A model generated the notes under the pieces. That model did no database searches. It saw nothing but the letters and a program-made list of their open reading frames with translations, and was not told where the DNA came from. A DNA stretch of 64,000 bases from Phallusia mammillata (lineage: Eukaryota). The DNA lies in assembly GCA_965637545.1 (NCBI GenBank), contig OZ281495.1, forward strand, positions 20,274,001 to 20,338,000. The letters run 5' to 3'. Made by a program: the position numbers and the translations under genes. This document shows positions 30,627 to 39,800 of this stretch, piece by piece (the stretch's first letter is position 1; every line of letters begins with the position of its first letter).

Positions 30627-32421
30627 CTGCAACAGGGCTCGCAGTGAATATTTGCACAATGTGCAAACGTAAATGCGCGCACTGTTTTCGCAAAAGTGCG
30701 TACATTTTTCGAAAATGTGCAAGTGCCAAAATGTGCGCACAATTTTTTGTGTGCAGATACCGAAATGTGCAGATCAAAATGTGCGCACTTTTTTCAAAAA
30801 ACTCCTATTTATCCAAATTGTTTAGCCTTCTTTAAGTTATGTTTTGCGCAAAGTGCACAAATATGTGTTAAAACGGCATATCTCGAAAATGCTAATGGTC
30901 AGGGGGTTGGGGTTGGGGTGAGGTAATATCTTAAAAATTCAAAAAAACTACATTCAATAAAACTGCGAACATTTTGATCTGCATAACTTGACATTTATGC
31001 GAACATTGTGCTAACAACGCTCGTTCCCCGTCTTTTAATTTCGGTTCGGCCGAACCGAATAGTTTTACCGAATAAATTCAACCGAAACAACCCAATCATT
31101 TCAGACGTCGTAAAGTTTCGCGTTTGACATGAAAACATAAGCTTTTTTGACATGAAAACATAAGACGGCGCTAGGCATGTAAACTATATGCGACCCGCGC
31201 GAATTATTATTAAACTTATCCGGCCCGCAGTGAAAAAAAGTTTGGTAACCGCTGGTTTAAAAAAACTATAGTTCTGTGAACTTTAAGCTTTGCCAGCCTG
31301 CCAATAAAAAAATGACTTTTTGTCTGGAGTGGGAAAAAACGATTGTTTTAAAATCATGGCGTATAGTTTTGTAATAGATTGCGTGGTGCATTATTAAGCA
31401 AAAAAGGCACGTAGGCCTGTACGTATTAAATTTTTGTTTGCACAAAAATGATCAGTTTCACAAAAGGCATTTGTTTTAAAAAAAACAGTATGCATGCAAT
31501 GCATATAGGCTACCGTTTTTTTTGCAAATGGGTAGCCTATTTTTTAAATTTTTTTAAAAGTAAGTTTAATTCGTGCTGTTTTTCTACACTTCGCCAAATT
31601 GGGTGAAATGTAAAATTTTTATCGTGTTGGGGACGCACTGATTAATGGTTGAACACTGAAAAACAACTTGCCTTCTATTGTTATTAGTCAGTGGTTCTCA
31701 AACTTTCATTATTTTTTCAAAACGGTCCCTTGGCCATTATTTTAAAGGCTCGCGATCCTTAAGCCTAAATGTGTATTTCAGGAAAACGAAAGTTGATTGC
31801 AGGATTTTAGCTGTTTATGCAAAATTACGCATAACAAAGATCCAAAGACAGCATGTGACATCACAGACAAGACAAAAAACATTACTATTATGCGCGAACA
31901 ATCAGGTTTTTGTTAATGGTAATGCAATAGAATAGACTATAAAGAGGCTATTGTTTAGCAATGGATACAGTCGATTTTCAAATCTACTTTGATTTAAACT
32001 TATTTAGTGGCACAAACTGACGCCAAATAAGATAGAATTACTTCAACCTTTTCGCGGTCCCTCCAAAATTGGCTCACGGACCCCAAAAGGACCGCGGACC
32101 CCAGTTTGAGAACCGCTGTTATAAGTATAAGTATTGGGTTATTATTCTAGTGCAGTGATTTCCAAACAGTTGTCCGCAATCTTCTTTTAGTGGCGGGCGT
32201 AGAGAAGAATAAACTAAGCAAGGGATACAAATCGAAACGTATCAAAAGAAGCATATGCATTTGTGAAACAGTATCAACAGGTTATGCGGTAATAGTACAC
32301 GATGAAAGATTGTTCCTCTTTGGAAAATGTGCGCATGTCTTGATCTGCACATTTTCGCGTCTGGAAATTTTAAAAAAATGTGCGTACTTTGTGCAAATAT
32401 TCACTATGAGGGCTGTTGCAG
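30627..32421. mobile_element. About 1.8-kb element with long imperfect inverted arms and nested MITE insertions
   Basis: The left arm CTGCAACAGGGCTCGCAGTGAATATTTGCACAA... matches the reverse complement of the right arm ...TTTGTGCAAATATTCACTATGAGGGCTGTTGCAG, and both share AATGTGCAGATCAA and GTGCGCAC motifs. No TSD was found. It could instead be two truncated copies in opposite orientation. Confidence 0.6.
31689..32118. mobile_element. hAT-Charlie-type MITE
   Basis: TIRs CAGTGGTTCTCAAACT ... AGTTTGAGAACCGCTG and an 8-bp TSD with one mismatch (TTATTAGT / TTATAAGT). Confidence 0.88.
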
Positions 32422-32429
32422 GACTGTAT

Positions 32430-32976
32430 TAAACAACAGGCAATTCAAGTAACCGCGCTTACAGGCATAGATAAAATAAGTGCACCACAGAAACTTTTAC
32501 AGCGATATTCTTAGTTGTATCGTTGTTTTTTGTGAATGGTAATATCGCAAAACAAACCGAACAGCCACGCACTCATCTTGCAGAGGCGAGTCACCGCTGT
32601 ATTGGGCATGCAGCATACGTAAATTTTGCGTTGAAGTTTTTTCACCAAACGAAATTAAATCAAAACTGACATCATCATCGCAACGTTCACTTGTATACGG
32701 TTTTTATACGTTTTTTGCAAATGTATATTTTTGGATAGTAATTTTTTATTATAATACGAAAGAAGGTAATGTAATGGTATTTGGTAACAAACACTTTTTC
32801 AGTTGCTAAAACTATTCTGCTGACTAATTTGTTCATATTGATGAGTCAGCAAGTTTGTTGCTTTCCACATGTATGTTGTTTTGTTTCGGTGGAACCACAA
32901 GCCACCAGCGACAGCAAAAATTACTTGGCTCTCTTGGCCGTTGGCCCTTAAATCTTTGCTATCATTACATTAAGAA
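32430..32976. promoter_or_regulatory. Probable bidirectional promoter region between RALGAPA (minus) and bHLH/THADA (plus)
   Basis: Divergent gene arrangement, locally CpG-containing sequence by eye, AP-1-like TGAGTCA at 32842-32848. A minus-strand donor CCT|GTAAGC at 32463/32462 could end a non-coding RALGAPA exon that splices to the acceptor tttttcag at 29835/29834. The TSS positions are not determined. Confidence 0.5.
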
Positions 32977-33806
32977 ATGGCTGAAAAATTGTCTCCCGGT
33001 CGGACCAAATCGAGAAAAGCATTGTATGCAAGGCACAGGTAGGCAAAGCTTATACGTCGTCTTTAACGTAGTTTGTTCCGAGTTTCCGACCTATAGACAG
33101 TAATGAAGAAATTGACGTATTGTGTATCGAATTTAATTGTCATATTTTTATTTGGCTCAGGAGCAATGTTGTTGCAAGTTACAATCGTTTGAGGGCAGTA
33201 TTACCAGAACAAAATCTTGACCTTGCAGATGGAAGTTATATGCAGGTTGATCACAATATACAAGAGGTCCTTTCTGCAAGCGGAAGTAAATATAACAGAG
33301 TAACTTTAGTCAATCGTGCTAAGTTATACATTATGCACTTGGAAGATGTTGCAAACAGCTTAATACAAGAGGCTAGTAGCAACAAAGCAGAGAAACAAGG
33401 ACAAGAGAGTGGTCAAACCGGTCCCAAAAATACTTTCAAAAACATGACAGATGTGCATCAGAATTTTCTTCGAAACTTTCAGCTGGGTAAACAGATTCAA
33501 AAGTTTGATTTTGATTGTTTGGAATCTCACCAGTTTTCACCAATGTCTCGTGTAAGAAGTGAATTTCATTCTACTAAAAAACAGGCACCACGGAATTCCA
33601 CAAAGAGCTTGCATGGAAATAGCTCACTTTCTGTCTTAGGTTCAGCAGTCCATCCAGCTATATTGATTCCAATAAATGTCACATCAGGAAATGCATTTCC
33701 ATTTATTGTTGAGGCTTATCCAACATCTCCTACAAGTCACAGTGTTGATTTAGGCTTTGTTTCAGCTGGAAATGCAAGCCAAGATACAGTTTCCAGTGAC
33801 AAGTGA
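32977..33806 (+). CDS. Two-exon atypical bHLH protein, STRA8-like, 235 aa
   Basis: Exon 1 is 32977-33038: ATG preceded by an in-frame TAA, encoding MAEKLSPGRTKSRKALYARH plus AG, donor GTAGGC. The intron is 33039-33160 and ends tttttatttggctcag. Exon 2 is 33161-33806, stop TGA. The spliced protein reads RKALYARHRSNVVASYNRLRAVLP (basic/helix 1) and SKYNRVTLVNRAKLYIMHLEDVANSLI (helix 2). AATAAA lies at 33863-33868. The gene model is well supported; the STRA8 assignment comes from a manual alignment only. Confidence 0.8.
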
Positions 33807-33862
33807 TTTCTAAGAATTGTTTTCTGTAAATGTGTTGCAGTTATTGATATTGTGAGTTGTTG

Positions 33863-33881
33863 AATAAAAGTTGTGTTGTAG
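33863..33881 (+). promoter_or_regulatory. Polyadenylation signal of the bHLH gene abutting the splice (probably SL trans-splice) acceptor of THADA
   Basis: AATAAA at 33863-33868, then agttgtgttgtAG (AG at 33880-33881), then aatttggc ATG (33890). Confidence 0.65.
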
Positions 33882-33889
33882 AATTTGGC

Positions 33890-36800
33890 ATGGCACCCCA
33901 TAGTAAAACTAAACTAGTTGCAAGTTTTTCAAAAGATGTAAAAATATATTTACACAACTTGTTTGCCGCAACTGATGTTTGGAAGCACTACAGTATTCTG
34001 GATGAATGTCTTAATGATAAAGCATCAAATTGGAAAACAAAATTTAATGAGGTTTGGTACATCAAAATAAGATTTAATTGATTGTTATTTCGTCACCTTG
34101 TATTTGTGAGTTAAAATATTATATATAGTGTACATATAAAAGAGTGTGATGTATTGTTGCTTAGATATGCACAATATCTTTTACTGACAACCACTGTGAT
34201 GATGAGTTGGTACAAATACTCTCAAATTTGTTTGTTTTCTGCATGGTCAAACATCCTTGCAAAAGTATTTTAAAAAGGTACCTTCACTTTGGCAAGATCA
34301 AATTGAAAAATTCTTTCTTTTTAATACCCATTGTTTTTTCAGCATTTTAAAGGATTGTTCAGACAAGAAACCAGCAGTTTTTATCCATGTGACCAAAGCA
34401 TTTACTGATCTTTGTCAGTCCTGCACAACCCTTGGTGTATCTGCTTGTCAAATCATTCAAACCTATGAACTAAGCATTTCTTCAAATTTTTTGAATGAAG
34501 AGCTGCAGTATGATACAATAATTGGTAAGCAAACATTTTATCACAATTTTTTGATAGCTATAAATTTTGCTGACATGTTTTTGTTGCAGGGGCAGTTGAT
34601 TGTATTAAGCAGCACATCAAAGTTTTGCAACAGAATGAAACTAAGTTGCCTGTAGAAACTTCTGTTTTAAACCTTTTAAGTGATGATCTCAAATGTTTGA
34701 ATTCATTTTTGAACAAACATGAATTTTTTTGCAATAAAAAAGCAATTGAATTGTCACTGTGTTACTTGCAAGATGCATGTGTTTATCTGCTCAAACAAGG
34801 TTAGTTAAAAATCATTTATGATAAGTTACTAAAAGTGACATGTAATGTTTTTAGAGCAATATGAAGGTGCTTGTTGGAATGCTGCTGCACTACTTTTGCC
34901 AAATCTTGTTTTAACTGTTTCAACATTGTCTTTTTATGAAATGGTGGGTATATTTATTTATGGACATTGCACTGAACAAAAAAGTTCATGCTTTTTATTT
35001 ATTTCGTACTGAATTTCAGGTTTACACTGTTTTTTCTATGGAAAAAAGTTTTACTTTGTTAAATGATACCAACAGCAACTTATGCCAATCTGCAAAACTT
35101 GCTGTATGTAATGGGATTTTAGTATTTTTATCGCATGAACATACTAACTTGTATGAGGAGCAATGTGAAACACAGCAAGCAAAACCTAATGCAACCAAAC
35201 TTTGTACAATAATGATGAAAGCCTTTGACTGGGTAAAGCTGATGTCTAAATGGTATGGTCAAGTTTACTGACTTTTTAATGTATAACTTACTTTTCATAT
35301 TAAATGCAGCATCATTGGAATCCCAGATGAAATAGCATTTGGGAGATGCATTCTTCAGTGGTGCATTACTTTGAGGTTTGTAGGATCAAATAAAATGTTT
35401 TGTTAAACAGTATTTGGTAAATAATGAAACACAGTCATTTATTAACACATTTCAATACAAAATACGTTCTTTAGCCTGTTTGTCTTACACTCTTTTGCAG
35501 ACCGGCTGTTATCTTTGCTTTCATACATGTTTATTACCATAACCATTGGAAAGATAAACTTAAAATGTTTTGTGGTTTGGTTCTATGGCAGTGGTTCTCA
35601 AACTCAAATCTGGGCTTTAAGAACATCTTGCGACCCAAGCCTTAAACAACAAAAATGTATTTTTTATTTTTGTATGAATAGGTATCATCCTTAAATGCTA
35701 ACTGTTACTTTCCAAGTTCAGGTTCGTATGATTAACCTCCTATCATTCCCCGTGCTAACGTGTTACAATCGCCGTGTGCATAATAGAAAATTGGAAGGCT
35801 ATTGTATGTATGTTATAATGATTGGTTCATTTTGCTGTATAGCGTTGTCGAGTGAGGCTGTATTTGGCTACGGTGCTATCAAAACTCTCAGAAAACCACT
35901 TACTTATGCTGCAATACTCCAAGGTTACCAAGATAAAGCCACATGAAATGCCTATGATACAATAATTCAGTTATGTCTGAGAATTGAAAATACTTGAAAA
36001 TTGAAATGAAAAAAGTTCGTTTGGGCAGAATTGAATCACCACAGCGCGACCCATTTTGTAACCCTGCGCGACCCATGTTTGGGTCTCGATCCATACTTTG
36101 AGAACCACTGTTCTATGGGGTCATCTTTTTAACAGTGAGGATATCACTAACAGAATCAAAAATGACCCCAGTCTCTGCAAGTTGTGACATTTGTCCACAA
36201 CAACACTTTTTTGAATCAAACAAATGTGATATTCCATGTAATGTTTAGGGGCATAAGAAATTATACGAAGCAATACATACTTTTATTTTTAGAGTACATG
36301 TGAAAAAAGTGAATCTCACAAATGAAGATTTTTCTCATGTTCTTAAATGGATTATGCCTCAGATATGCATGGGGTTGGATCATGCCACTGATCTTGTTCG
36401 TCATCAAACCAGAGATGCACTGGAAAACATTCTCAAAGTAGCTTATTGGCTCTCTCAGAATGGTAAACATGTGTTTTTAGGGATAAATTTATTGATTCTC
36501 AACAAAATATTTTTAGAATTAGCAAATTGTGATTTTGTACGAGGCATGTTAGTTGATGTTCTGAAGTGGAGCTGGCACAAGAGAGCATTGTATGTTGCCA
36601 TAAATTGCATTCTACAACATGTATCACCCTCCAATGTAACAAATCATCAGCCTGATATTGTGTCAAAAATTCTTTCTGGTAAAGTAATAATTTCCTGTTT
36701 TTTATTGATTCCTTGTCAACCAAGCACATATCACATAAACAAAATTGGTTTTAGCTATATGTGACCAGTCACTTGCTCCTTATGCATCCAACCTGTTTTG

Positions 36801-39800
36801 TACACTTGCACAAACCACCCTGGATTTGTGTTCGGATGAACAATCTGCTCATTTTGATTTTATCATGCCAATATTAGAAGCATTGCAAAAATACGATGAA
36901 CATCATTCTCGATTGCTCCTGGATGTATGACAGCAGTACTGCAATATTTTGTAATGTTAAACTTATACGCTGTGCATATTTTTCAGTATTGCTTAAAGAA
37001 GATCCTAAAATTGTTTGGAACAAAGGGCTTAAACTATATCATCTCTAACTTTGCAATTGAAAAAGATAGACGATTAAACATTTTAATTATGTGTCTTAGC
37101 ACTGCCCAACAGTTGGGGTTACTCCAGGTTTGATAATTCATATAAATTTTTATCTATATGTATTATAACAATCTTTAAACAACAGTTTGGTCTTTTTTTG
37201 TTTCTAGAAGAGAGAAAAAACCTTGGAAAATGATGACTGGAGACCTGGTGTGAAGTTTCTTGTTATAAAACAGGCACTGGTGCATCCATCTTCTCAGGTT
37301 AAATACAATTAAAGATAAAATTGTCAAGTGAAATTTGATTGGTTTGTGGTTGGATGGTTATACGTTTAAGCCATTTCTCTTACTTTTCAAATATTTTTTG
37401 CAAAATCATGACCCACTTGAATTTGATATCATGTTTTTTATTTTTCTGATTGTCATTTTTATGGAGACATTATATTTGATCTTATTTTTGGCTTTTAGAT
37501 TCGAATTGATGCTTTTTCACTGATCTGTAATTGCTGGAAACCTTCAGAATTGCTACAAGCTGTTGATTTAGATCTCATTGTCTGTTCTATCCCATACAAT
37601 TTGACTGTTCAATGCCCAGCTTTTCGCCAGCAGTTACTTTGTTTGTTAAAGAAAGTAGGTGACTAAACCATTTTAAAAATACCCAAACCTATTTTTGATT
37701 TTTTTATTAGTTGCTGTCTCGAATAAAACTTAACCACCAGAAGGTATGCAAAGAATTGTTGAAAAAAAATTCTCCGATTTCATGCGATGAGCTAACAGCA
37801 TTCAAGAATCGCTATGAGGTATTTTACTATAATTTATGATTTGGAGTTGTGAAATGCTTCAGTGCAATAAAACTTGAACATGTTTTGACAGAGTTTTATG
37901 AAATGGTTGATTGATTTTTTATTTGATCAATTGTTTGAGGGTGCCTGTTTCTCCAGACGCTATGTTTGTCTTATTTTGTTAACTACCCTTTTTGAAATCA
38001 GTGGACAAGGGCAAGGTATTAACAGTTACTGTTCTCCAAAATCTAAACAGTTTTAAAACCAAGAAAAAAATATTTCATGTCTGTTTTTTCGCAGGCCTGT
38101 GCCCAAATATGAAAACTATTTTGTCAAAAGACAGAATTGATACACTATACAGAACGATGCATGATAATTATGAAGAAAACCGAGAACTCGCTCTTAAGTT
38201 GATGACTTCTTATGGTGCCAATGCTCTTGTAAAGAACCATGTATGTGTAATGATAAAACACAAAACATAGAAAAAAACAAGGAGTTGTTTTAAAATGATA
38301 CAGAATGTAAAAACACAATATAAACCACATTTTACTTGCTTTCGCTGCTTTTGTTTTAAGTGGGATAATGTGTATGTGAAACAATGCATTTTGCTCAAAA
38401 AAATAAAGAAATTTGATTACCTTTTTTTTATTGTATTTTTCGACAATCAGGCGACAGTCCGAAAACTGAAAATTGCACTTTCAATTTGATTACTTGCAAC
38501 ACGAACATAAAAATATGTTTTATTCTTTTGTATTGGCTGTTTAGTTTGAAAAGAATCACCTTCAAGAACAGGAAGATTGTGCAATAAAGCAATGCAGGAA
38601 AACGTACAAGCCAGAAGAATGCAAAGATGCAGCCTTTCAACTTCGGTTGATTGTTGAATTGTCAAATGATTGTTTAACTACGGTTTTAAGGTTAGTTGAA
38701 AAATACTGCTTTAAACCGAACTTAATTTTAAAAGCTTACATTGCTTAAACATGATTTTTTTTTAGAATTTGTCAAAGTATTTTGGCGCAACTTAACACAG
38801 ATCTACAAATGGCAGAAACAAACCTCTTGCAAGCATTATCATCAAGTCCGTTGTATGCAAGCCTTTATTGCATTCGAATGTTGTTGCTGAACACCCAATT
38901 ATGGTAATATATGAGCTCATGCATGCCTTTTTTGTTAAATTTCTTTTTAAGAAGCTTTGCAAATACACGCATTATATTTTCTGTTCTTGCAGCAAAATAT
39001 ATGGCAATACGGGATGGCGGGAATTGATACAGAAGTGCACAAAAGCTTGCTTTGCAGTTTTCGAAGCTGTTTTTCCTGTAGTTGGAAGTGTAAGTCCTGA
39101 AGGACACCTGCCGCAAATGATGGATAACACTGAAAATGATGACAAAAACTCTTACGACAATTTACCTGATCTTTTGCGACCCCTTGTGGATAGTGACACA
39201 CAATCAACACACGGTATTTTGTTTTAAAAAAAGTAATACCTAAATTTGGATATTTGCATACCTTGACAGTTAGATTCATCGTCTGTTTTTGCTTGAGGTG
39301 TATTATAAAACGGAGACGAACATGGGATTGTTTTCTGGATAGGTGATTTCGACGAACGACTTGCAGCCCAACGTGTGTTAGTTTCGTGCTGGAGAAGCGC
39401 CAAGGAATCATCGTTGCTACTGGAGACTATTGCTAAAAACTGTCCATGTGATTCCACACCAGATTCATGCGATGGCCTGCTTTTGCGGCAACAGGTTTGT
39501 ATAAATATGATGTAGCTATTATCCACCCTTCAGCGCTCAACCAAGTAAAAAAATACTCAACTCTTAAGTACATAAATGACATACCACCGCATTGAAAAAC
39601 GAGGTTGGCAGTACTTTCAATTTATAGCCTGCTTGTCGTTTTTTCTACTGTAAATAACAGAAAAAACAATTCACAATTTCCTTCGTATATTGTCTCTTTT
39701 GTTGCATACCGTCTTTTTTGTCGTTCATGCTCAAATTGAAATGAGTATATTTCTTTTGATTTTCCAGCTTTTAGACATAGGATTACATCTTCGGCGCCAG

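What the first reader, a model, noticed from the sequence alone, without database searches (positions are those of the whole stretch)
32977..33806. Hidden two-exon STRA8-like bHLH gene: a candidate invertebrate-chordate counterpart of the vertebrate meiosis initiator
Seen in sequence: splicing 32977-33038 to 33161-33806 joins a basic segment to the 228-codon ORF and gives KSRKALYARHRSNVVASYNRLRAVLPEQ ... NRVTLVNRAKLYIMHLEDVANSLI. Established knowledge, recalled: human STRA8 reads VARRRLSQARHRATLAALFNNLRKTVYSQ ... SKWQVLNKAKSHIPELEQTLDNLL. Both align without gaps across each helix. They share ARHR, exactly six residues, an aromatic, N.LR, and then N[RK]AK..I..LE......L. Both also lack the ERxR glutamate of canonical E-box-binding bHLH proteins. 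STRA8 works with MEIOSIN to trigger meiotic entry and is usually described as vertebrate-restricted. Differences: the loop here is much longer (roughly 20 extra residues), and I cannot recognise STRA8's C-terminal conserved blocks. Inference: this may be a pre-vertebrate STRA8-family member, easily missed or merged with THADA by annotation because the basic region sits in a 62-nt exon.
Basis: partly seen in the sequence, partly recalled or inferred. Interest (0 to 1): 0.9.

Follow-up and report, generated by a model that had tools for sequence, protein, structure and literature searches.

The report
Tunicate STRA8-like bHLH gene beside THADA
A small, conserved two-exon gene just upstream of THADA in this sea-squirt-type genome encodes a divergent helix-loop-helix protein whose closest relative among the families I could test is vertebrate STRA8, the meiosis trigger thought to be vertebrate-only; whether it acts in meiosis is untested.

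Summary
ATG 32977, donor CACAG|GTAGGC at 33038/33039, acceptor CAG|G at 33160/33161 and stop 33804-33806 give a 235-aa protein.

The gene is real. Exon 1, the phase-2 intron and exon 2 are conserved in three other genomic loci, with intron lengths from 94 to about 2,200 nt. dN/dS against the closest relative is about 0.2.

It belongs to a small family: an annotated Clavelina bHLH protein plus unnamed marine sequences. Members share a basic region (RR.SQARHR), helix 2, a post-bHLH helix and a C-terminal DLGFVS motif.

At family level the nearest family I could test is STRA8.
- hhalign gives 98% probability (P 2e-13) over 94 columns, against P 8e-5 for MAX.
- The family profile scores STRA8s at 18-37 bits, against 17.8 bits or less for every solved bHLH.
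- Pfam's STRA8 bHLH model scores a short-loop member at 24.9 bits (cut-off 25).

The window's own protein is too diverged to link directly (13.8 bits). STRA8's C-terminal blocks, LxCxE motif and intron positions are absent.

RNA contigs cover the gene at low depth but keep the intron, and none shows the junction.

Not tested: MEIOSIN, SOHLH, TCFL5, FIGLA, and expression.

The parts
32880..32976 (+). 5' untranslated stretch; RNA-type contigs begin at 32880 (X2) and 32895 (X1)
   Evidence: table 8; word depth is zero at 32168-32835
32977..33038 (+). Exon 1 coding part: MAEKLSPGRTKSRKALYARH plus 2 nt of the Arg21 codon. It holds the basic region with the ARHR signature and no E-box glutamate.
   Evidence: conserved peptide and phase-2 donor in L001, L002 and L005; exon-1 dN/dS about 0.14
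33039..33160 (+). Intron, GT..AG, 122 nt, phase 2; an in-frame TAG at 33040-33042 if it is retained
   Evidence: retained in RNA-type contigs
33161..33206 (+). Start of exon 2: last base of the Arg21 codon, then helix 1 (SNVVASYNRLRAVLP)
   Evidence: model helix 2-13 of the exon-2 product
33207..33296 (+). Long loop, about 20 residues longer than in STRA8 and about 17 longer than in short-loop family members; contains a short predicted helix (IQEVLSAS)
33297..33401 (+). Helix 2 and its extension (RVTLVNRAKLYIMHLEDVANSLIQE...)
   Evidence: helix 46-80 of the exon-2 product; family block NKT.LL.RA..Y..HLE
33444..33476 (+). Post-bHLH helix (TDVHQNFLRNF), conserved across the family. It aligns to STRA8's SLEEVKEEYxxMY block.
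   Evidence: block alone P 0.0019; helix 95-105, pLDDT about 80
33738..33791 (+). C-terminal conserved motif HSVDLGFVSAGNASQDTV in a region predicted to be disordered
33804..33806 (+). Stop codon TGA
33863..33868 (+). AATAAA poly(A) signal of the bHLH gene
   Evidence: the RNA contig over the gene ends at 33856
33880..33892 (+). AG acceptor (33880-33881) where the downstream THADA-like mRNA contig begins, and its ATG (33890-33892): an operon-like junction
   Evidence: X1 record 4, 5,843 nt, depth 72, spliced 34049/34163 and onward; PF10350 THADA/TRM732 hit on ORF 38868-39224; same gene order in L001

Best explanation
This is a real protein-coding gene of two coding exons. It encodes a 235-aa transcription-factor-like protein with four parts: a non-canonical basic region (ARHR, no E-box glutamate), a helix-loop-helix with an unusually long loop, one further conserved helix, and a disordered tail carrying a conserved DLGFVS motif. 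It is the fast-evolving local member of a small family found in ascidians and in unnamed marine sequences. The nearest relative of that family among those tested is vertebrate STRA8, most likely by common descent of the bHLH plus the adjoining helix. The rest of the protein is not shared. Inferred, not shown: it works as a dimerising bHLH regulator, alone or with a partner, with DNA contacts unlike E-box binders, as STRA8 does. Its position directly upstream of THADA, with a poly(A) signal 12 nt before THADA's acceptor, suggests co-transcription as a tunicate-type operon. A role in meiotic entry is a hypothesis only.
For: Gene reality:
- Exon-1 peptide, phase-2 GT donor and AG acceptor are conserved in L001, L002 and L005 despite intron lengths of 94 to about 2,200 nt.
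- pN 0.28 against pS 0.67 versus L001; exon 1 pN 0.13 against pS 0.55.
- An exhaustive HMMER search found only family members: P0001 at 8e-120 and Clavelina P0002 at 4e-25.
- mRNA-type contigs and the RefSeq Clavelina model read straight across the basic/helix-1 junction.
- RNA-type cover runs from 32880 to 33856, with none upstream.

bHLH fold:
- PF00010 gives 26.1 bits on P0002, above the cut-off of 20.7.
- 71-81 of the 100 nearest ESM Atlas clusters are HLH.
- AF2 models show helix-loop-helix plus one extra helix.
- All 30 best Swiss-Prot fold matches are bHLH proteins.

Link to STRA8:
- PF23175 bHLH_STRA8 is the only or the best specific family hit: P0016 24.9 bits over profile positions 15-77 of 80, P0131-3 19.6-22.0, P0002 18.6, L002 peptide 18.4, window peptide 13.8, P0004 13.8.
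- MAX, SREBP1 and MyoD controls gave no PF23175 hit.
- Family profile A4 scores STRA8s at maximum 37.0, median 27.6 and minimum 17.8 bits, against a best solved bHLH of 17.8 bits.
- STRA8 profile A7 scores P0016 31.0, P0132 30.5, P0131 29.6 and L002 28.1 bits, against MAX 21.3.
- hhalign of family against STRA8 gives 98.0% probability and P 2e-13 over 94 columns. The long-loop group alone gives 97.6% and P 4e-12. Family against MAX gives P 8e-5.
- The post-bHLH block alone aligns in the same register at P 0.0019.
Against: - The window's own protein is not detectable against STRA8 models: 3.9 bits with the local STRA8 HMM and 13.8 bits (E 0.065) on PF23175. L001 scores 14.8 bits and Clavelina 21.0 bits, at or below MAX's 21.3 in the reverse direction.
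- No family member formally passes Pfam's STRA8 cut-off.
- The C-terminal halves show no significant similarity (hhalign P 0.63).
- STRA8's conserved LxCxE motif is absent.
- STRA8's first coding intron lies after the loop, not after ARHR (python STRA8 gene).
- No synteny argument is available.
- RNA contigs keep the intron and show no 33038/33161 joint. The low cover could be THADA's polycistronic precursor rather than mature mRNA.
- MEIOSIN, SOHLH1/2, TCFL5 and FIGLA were not compared.
- The fold search does not discriminate (human STRA8 is rank 8, E 0.2).
Confidence: 0.68

Rival explanations
1. An orphan, tunicate-lineage bHLH (of the 'Bhlh-tun' kind) with no special relationship to STRA8. 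On this view the shared ARHR basic region and the helix-2 pattern are convergent, or are leftovers of generic bHLH ancestry in two fast-evolving families that both lost the E-box glutamate.
For: Ciona catalogues list four bHLH genes without counterparts outside tunicates (PMC7693978). All PF23175 hits are below the curated cut-off. Specialised bHLH models cross-hit unrelated bHLH proteins at 15-17 bits, for example MAX on INO4, INO2 and SAC51. Nothing outside the first 130 or so residues is shared. Intron positions differ.
Against: STRA8 stands 10-19 bits above every solved bHLH with the family profile, and the best members stand 7-10 bits above MAX with the STRA8 profile. hhalign is 4-8 orders of magnitude better for STRA8 than for MAX. 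The alignment continues past the bHLH into a separate helix. Short-loop members carry the exact RRRLSQARHR string of STRA8.
Confidence: 0.2
2. A relative of another germ-line or atypical bHLH family that could not be fetched here (MEIOSIN/BHMG1, SOHLH1/2, TCFL5, FIGLA), or a pro-orthologue of a STRA8+MEIOSIN ancestor rather than of STRA8 itself.
For: These families were not in my comparison set. The literature describes STRA8 and MEIOSIN as sharing a bHLH plus an HMG-type architecture and as pairing through their bHLH domains (PMC13637641).
Against: None of these proteins appears among the 30 best Swiss-Prot fold matches, whereas STRA8 does. Pfam lists only generic HLH and bHLH_STRA8 for the family. 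No HMG box was found in any member.
Confidence: 0.09
3. Not a functional gene here: a decaying ORF lying in the 5' outron or precursor of THADA. The RNA cover would then be unprocessed THADA transcript.
For: RNA contigs keep the intron, sit at a tenth of THADA's depth, and end just before THADA's acceptor.
Against: An intact 235-codon frame, intact splice signals, purifying selection including on exon 1, and conservation of the same gene and gene order in other species.
Confidence: 0.03

Closest known systems
Vertebrate STRA8 (Pfam PF23175 bHLH_STRA8)
   Same: Basic region without the E-box glutamate and with the ARHR core; the full RRRLSQARHR string is present in short-loop relatives. Helix 1 follows ..[VL]A..[FY]..LR and helix 2 follows K..[VL]L.[KR]A[KR].[YH]I..LE......L[LI]K. 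A further helix shortly after the bHLH ([SI]LEEV[KR]..[FY]AR.[FY]) is shared. Generic-HLH scores are similarly weak (15-26 bits) in both groups.
   Different: The loop is about 20 residues longer in the window's group. None of STRA8's C-terminal blocks is present (YLNFYKQTMDLL, SAAISHLWQ, STPEEILFEDAFDVA), nor its LxCxE motif. The family has its own tail motifs (AILIPI, S[IV]DLGFVS). Intron positions differ. The protein is shorter (235 aa against 300-400 aa). Expression and partners are unknown.
Ciona 'tunicate bHLH' orphans (Bhlh-tun1-4) and bHLH-like1 (PMC7693978)
   Same: bHLH genes of ascidians without an assigned vertebrate counterpart. Bhlh-tun3 has no expression data and only a recent gene model.
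   Different: I could not obtain their sequences, so identity with any of them is untested. None has been linked to STRA8 in the papers I could search.
Group B bHLH-zipper proteins with long loops (yeast HMS1, TYE7; SREBP; MAX)
   Same: These are the best solved-structure matches of the family profile. HMS1 also has a long loop.
   Different: They score only 14-18 bits. They keep the E-box glutamate and arginine contacts. They have no post-bHLH block.

Membership tests
STRA8 (PF23175) | bHLH domain reaches Pfam's curated cut-off (25 bits) on the STRA8-specific model | tested here: not met
   The window's basic+helix-1 peptide scores 13.8 bits (E 0.065) and the exon-2 product gives no hit. The best family member, P0016, scores 24.9 bits over profile positions 15-77 of 80. 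True STRA8s score 109-167 bits.
STRA8 (PF23175) | Basic region lacks the E-box glutamate and carries ARHR six residues before the aromatic of helix 1 | tested here: met
   The window reads LYARHRSNVVASY and STRA8 reads SQARHRATLAGLF. The fuller RRRLSQARHR string is absent from the window but present in P0016 and P0131-3, and nearly so in L002 and Clavelina.
STRA8 (PF23175) | Profile-level similarity to STRA8 exceeds that to other bHLH families | tested here: met
   At family level only. Family profile A4 scores STRA8s at 17.8-37.0 bits against 17.8 bits or less for solved bHLH proteins. hhalign gives P 2e-13 against 8e-5 for MAX. In the reverse direction P0016 scores 31.0 bits against MAX 21.3, but the window gives no hit. 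MEIOSIN, SOHLH, TCFL5 and FIGLA were not in the panel.
STRA8 (PF23175) | Conserved block after the bHLH (SLEEVKEEYxxMY) | tested here: inconclusive
   It aligns in register to the family block sl.dVR..F.RNF. Taken alone, P is 0.0019 and probability 14%. A helix is predicted there in both models.
STRA8 (PF23175) | C-terminal conserved blocks and the RB-binding LxCxE motif | tested here: not met
   hhalign of the C-terminal halves gives P 0.63. LxCxE is conserved in STRA8s and is not conserved in the family.
STRA8 (PF23175) | Shared intron positions | tested here: not met
   The python STRA8 gene has basic region and helix 1 in one exon, with its first intron after the loop. The family's intron splits the Arg codon that ends ARHR.
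STRA8 (PF23175) | Germ-cell expression at meiotic entry, retinoic-acid induction, pairing with MEIOSIN | not testable with these tools
   Run and tissue names are coded, and only contigs were available.
Generic bHLH (PF00010) | Helix-loop-helix domain recognised by the general model or by fold | tested here: met
   P0002 scores 26.1 bits against a cut-off of 20.7, and P0004 scores 20.0. The window's exon-2 product alone gives no hit, but it is homologous to these proteins at 32-77 bits and its model shows the fold. All fold matches are bHLH proteins.

The most novel reading that the evidence does not exclude
The family is the true pre-vertebrate orthologue of STRA8. That would place the origin of the STRA8 bHLH module before the tunicate-vertebrate split. 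On this reading the gene acts at meiotic entry in tunicate germ cells, with the vertebrate C-terminal half (RB binding, HMG-like region) added later, and its output is controlled by how the shared bHLH-THADA transcript is processed.
Probability: 0.27. Interest if true: 0.85.

Novelty: new variant of a known kind. Interest (0 to 1): 0.72.

Why it matters
STRA8 and MEIOSIN are treated as the vertebrate switch for entering meiosis. A 2026 study states that when this axis arose is unknown, and that no species outside vertebrates had been examined (PMC13637641). A Ciona testis single-cell study states that STRA8 has no homologue in that genome (PMC9776925). A tunicate family that shares STRA8's unusual basic region, helix 2 and the helix after the bHLH gives a concrete candidate to test in a tractable chordate, by expression in gonad, knockout and partner search. 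It would also show which half of STRA8 is ancient and which is a vertebrate addition. If the link proves wrong, the gene is still a conserved orphan bHLH, of which no product of comparable length (118-374 aa) was in the protein collection searched, in an operon with THADA.

Tried and rejected
- Pfam on the exon-2 product and on the exon-1 peptide separately found nothing.
- The word-indexed protein search with the exon-2 product found only P0001. With P0016 it found only P0131-3. These searches cannot see STRA8 for lack of shared 5-residue words.
The E-values are biased by the bait and are not used as evidence. All statistics were recomputed with bait-free profiles.
- ESM Atlas searches returned generic HLH clusters only, at weak scores of 0.79-0.81.
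- The Foldseek Swiss-Prot search does not discriminate between bHLH families.
- Exon 1 of the L004 relative was not found within 6 kb upstream.
- P0005's contig gave no DNA.
- A spliced-leader search on the mRNA contigs gave nothing usable.
- Paper searches for run accessions, for Bhlh-tun3 and for STRA8 peptide strings found nothing further.
- The bacterial promoter and terminator scan is irrelevant to this eukaryotic locus.
- My intron 'identity' figure comes from a cheap-gap global alignment and means nothing.
- Steps left out: the whole spliced 235-aa protein has no reference, so it was not sent to Pfam, structure prediction, or the exact-sequence contig look-up. Only a 37-residue junction peptide and the referenced exon-2 product were used. 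Whole-protein work was done in scripts from the window file.
Each matched PF00010 at 60-68 bits.

Full report
**1. The observation**

Reading 32500-34300 and rebuilding the coding sequence by script confirms every coordinate.
- ATG is at 32977.
- Exon 1 ends CAC AG at 33038 and is followed by GTAGGC.
- The intron ends TTTGGCTCAG at 33160.
- Exon 2 runs from 33161 to TGA at 33804-33806.

Without splicing the frame stops at TAG 33040-33042. The 228-codon ORF listed mechanically then has no ATG before helix 1.

**2. Is it a gene?**

The word-indexed protein search with the exon-2 product found one relative, P0001, at 52% identity. Its 2.1-kb genomic contig L001 has these features:
- an upstream exon encoding DKFSPRRTSRRAMYARH;
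- the same CAC AG|GTAAGC donor;
- a 255-nt intron and an AATAG|G acceptor;
- a THADA-like gene directly downstream (tblastx).

An exhaustive HMMER search of 1.8 billion representatives, using a profile of the two exon-2 products, found six proteins and nothing else. They include P0002, annotated by NCBI and UniProt as a bHLH-domain protein of the ascidian Clavelina lepadiformis.

In the genomic loci of two further relatives I found the first exon by scanning for phase-2 donors after basic peptides. L002 reads EKRRASQARH-R|GTATGC and L005 reads RESVQKH-R|GTATGA. Their introns are 94 nt and about 2,200 nt.

The same split Arg codon in four species, with unrelated intron lengths, is strong comparative evidence for the splice. 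Against L001, pN is 0.28 and pS 0.67 overall. In the exon-1 part they are 0.13 and 0.55. That is purifying selection, and it includes the small exon.

**3. RNA**

Two RNA-type runs hold contigs over 32880-33856 at word depth about 5-7, with none at 32168-32835. So the stretch is transcribed. However, the contigs run through the intron (X1 32895-33165; X2 32880-33109), and no 33038/33161 joint is listed.

One X2 contig starts exactly at 33158. That is the first base shared by the spliced and unspliced forms, which is what a branch in the assembly graph would give. This is only a hint.

The downstream gene's 5,843-nt contig has these features:
- it starts at 33881, right after AG 33880-33881;
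- its depth is about 72;
- it is properly spliced;
- an ORF of it (38868-39224) matches PF10350 THADA/TRM732.

AATAAA lies at 33863-33868. The low, unspliced cover over the bHLH gene may therefore be a polycistronic precursor of THADA in these samples.

Indirect support comes from relatives. Their mRNA-type contigs (L006, L008, L009) and the RefSeq Clavelina model read continuously across the basic/helix-1 junction.

**4. The family**

While fishing for STRA8 sequences (see section 5), a 370-aa protein from an RNA contig, P0016, turned up. A search with it found P0131-3, which are 545-552 aa and come from plankton metatranscriptomes.

An alignment of all members shows six shared blocks:
- the basic region R[RK].[SL]SQA[RK]HR;
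- helix 1, ..[VI]A..Y..LR.[VL]LP;
- helix 2, NK[TR].LL.[RK]A[RK].Y[VI].HLE;
- a post-bHLH block, [ST][LI].[DE][VI]R..F.RNF.L.K.I..Y;
- a hydrophobic AILIPI-type block;
- a C-terminal S[IV]DLGFVS block.

P0016 and P0131-3 have a loop about 17 residues shorter than the window's group. The two groups are clearly homologous. The HMM of one group scores members of the other at 32-77 bits, including 32.1 bits for the window protein.

AF2 models give the following:
- basic region plus helix 1;
- loop;
- a long helix 2;
- one more helix on the post-bHLH block (pLDDT about 80 in the window model);
- a disordered remainder.

**5. Which bHLH?**

*Pfam.* The 2025 copy of Pfam holds a STRA8-specific model, PF23175.

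| Query | PF23175 (cut-off 25 bits) | Generic HLH PF00010 |
|---|---|---|
| P0016 | 24.9 bits, E 2e-5, profile positions 15-77 of 80 | 15.2 bits |
| P0131-3 | 19.6-22.0 bits | 17.4-18.4 bits |
| P0002 (Clavelina) | 18.6 bits | 26.1 bits |
| P0004 | 13.8 bits, on helix 2 | 20.0 bits |
| L002 junction peptide | 18.4 bits, the only family listed | none |
| Window junction peptide (37 aa) | 13.8 bits, the only family listed | none |
| Real STRA8s | 109-167 bits | 15-25 bits |

On the generic model, real STRA8s fall in the same weak range as this family. The MAX and SREBP1 controls cross-hit other specialised bHLH models at 15-17 bits. Hits of that size are therefore not proof in themselves. What is informative is which model is hit.

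Those E-values are biased and are not used.

*Bait-free profiles.* Both directions were scored against the same 177,635-sequence frame.

| Profile | Target | Score |
|---|---|---|
| Family A4 | STRA8s | max 37.0, median 27.6, min 17.8 bits |
| Family A4 | HMS1 (best solved bHLH) | 17.8 bits |
| Family A4 | SREBP-2 | 15.2 bits |
| Family A4 | TYE7 | 14.3 bits |
| Family A4 | MAX | 14.0 bits |
| STRA8 A7 | P0016 | 31.0 bits |
| STRA8 A7 | P0132 | 30.5 bits |
| STRA8 A7 | P0131 | 29.6 bits |
| STRA8 A7 | L002 | 28.1 bits |
| STRA8 A7 | Clavelina | 21.0 bits |
| STRA8 A7 | L001 | 14.8 bits |
| STRA8 A7 | Window | nothing |
| STRA8 A7 | MAX | 21.3 bits |
| STRA8 A7 | NeuroD1 | 18.5 bits |

*Profile-profile comparison (hhalign).*
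- Family against STRA8: 98.0% probability, P 2e-13, 94 columns.
- The window's long-loop group alone against STRA8: 97.6%, P 4e-12, 98 columns.
- Family against single STRA8 sequences: P 2e-9 to 6e-12.
- Family against MAX: P 8e-5. STRA8 against MAX: P 9e-6.

The alignment runs beyond helix 2 into the post-bHLH block. For example, IEEVRKDFARNF in P0016 lies against LEEVKEEYARMY in STRA8. Taken alone, that block aligns in the same register at P 0.0019.

**6. What is not shared**
- The C-terminal halves give P 0.63. The best local match is SiDLGFvSq against kDSGVdSQ, which is curious but unsupported.
- STRA8's conserved LxCxE motif is missing from the family.
- In a python STRA8 gene the basic region and helix 1 share an exon, and the first intron follows the loop. 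The family's intron position is therefore not ancestral to both, or one lineage moved it.
- The fold search only says 'bHLH'. Human STRA8 is rank 8 of 30 at E 0.2.

**7. Reading**

The gene is real and encodes a bHLH protein. Its family is closer to STRA8 than to any bHLH I could put beside it, over the bHLH and one adjoining helix.

The window's copy (LYARHR, long loop) is one of the most diverged members. Its link to STRA8 is therefore transitive: window to family is solid, and family to STRA8 is good but not overwhelming.

I put 0.68 on this statement. Full orthology with a meiotic role gets about 0.27. How it works is inferred from family knowledge. bHLH proteins dimerise through helices 1 and 2. 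A basic region without the glutamate will not read a canonical E-box. STRA8 uses its bHLH to pair with MEIOSIN (PMC13637641).

**8. Literature**
- The origin of the STRA8-MEIOSIN axis is an open question, and non-vertebrates were not examined (PMC13637641).
- A Ciona testis single-cell paper lists STRA8 among markers with no homologue in the genome (PMC9776925).
- Ciona bHLH catalogues contain four orphan 'tunicate bHLH' genes and a SOHLH-like gene, some without expression data (PMC7693978). This gene may be one of them if the window is Ciona. I could not check that.
- I found no paper linking a tunicate gene to STRA8.

**9. Limits**
- Tissues of the runs are coded.
- The whole spliced protein has no reference, so it could not be sent to the remote tools.

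Noticed in passing
window 33804-33892: Operon-like junction. The bHLH stop is at 33804-33806 and AATAAA at 33863-33868. The THADA-like mRNA contig starts at 33881, right after an AG, and its ATG is at 33890. The same bHLH-then-THADA order is seen in L001 and weakly in L002. THADA depth is about ten times that of the bHLH gene.
   Followed up: partly
window 31667-32167 and 35508-36175: Very high-copy repeats. Word depth in DNA-type runs is 1e4 to 5e5 against a baseline of about 115-370, with many internal joints and loose ends.
   Followed up: no
window 33738-33791; STRA8 proteins P0012 and others: The family's conserved C-terminal DLGF[VN]S[AQ] resembles STRA8's near-invariant DSGV[DE]SQG, which has the form of a DSGxxS phosphodegron. 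hhalign picks this register but without significance (P 0.63).
   Followed up: partly
L008, L009 (P0131); L006 (P0016): Short-loop family members carrying the exact STRA8 string RRRLSQARHR come from plankton metatranscriptome-type samples (ERR1719466, JGI 3300018712) and from an RNA run (SRR27980872) of unknown organism. If these organisms are not tunicates, the family is older than the tunicate-vertebrate split.
   Followed up: partly
window 33039-33160: The intron is retained in the RNA-type contigs of two runs, which puts an in-frame stop at 33040-33042. This could be unprocessed precursor or regulated intron retention.
   Followed up: partly
L004 6001-6615 (P0010): This relative has no detectable basic-region exon within 6 kb upstream. 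An in-frame stop lies just before its ATG, so it may be an HLH protein without a basic region, or its first exon lies further away.
   Followed up: partly
It could be a paralogue or a partner candidate. I did not see the sequence.
   Followed up: no
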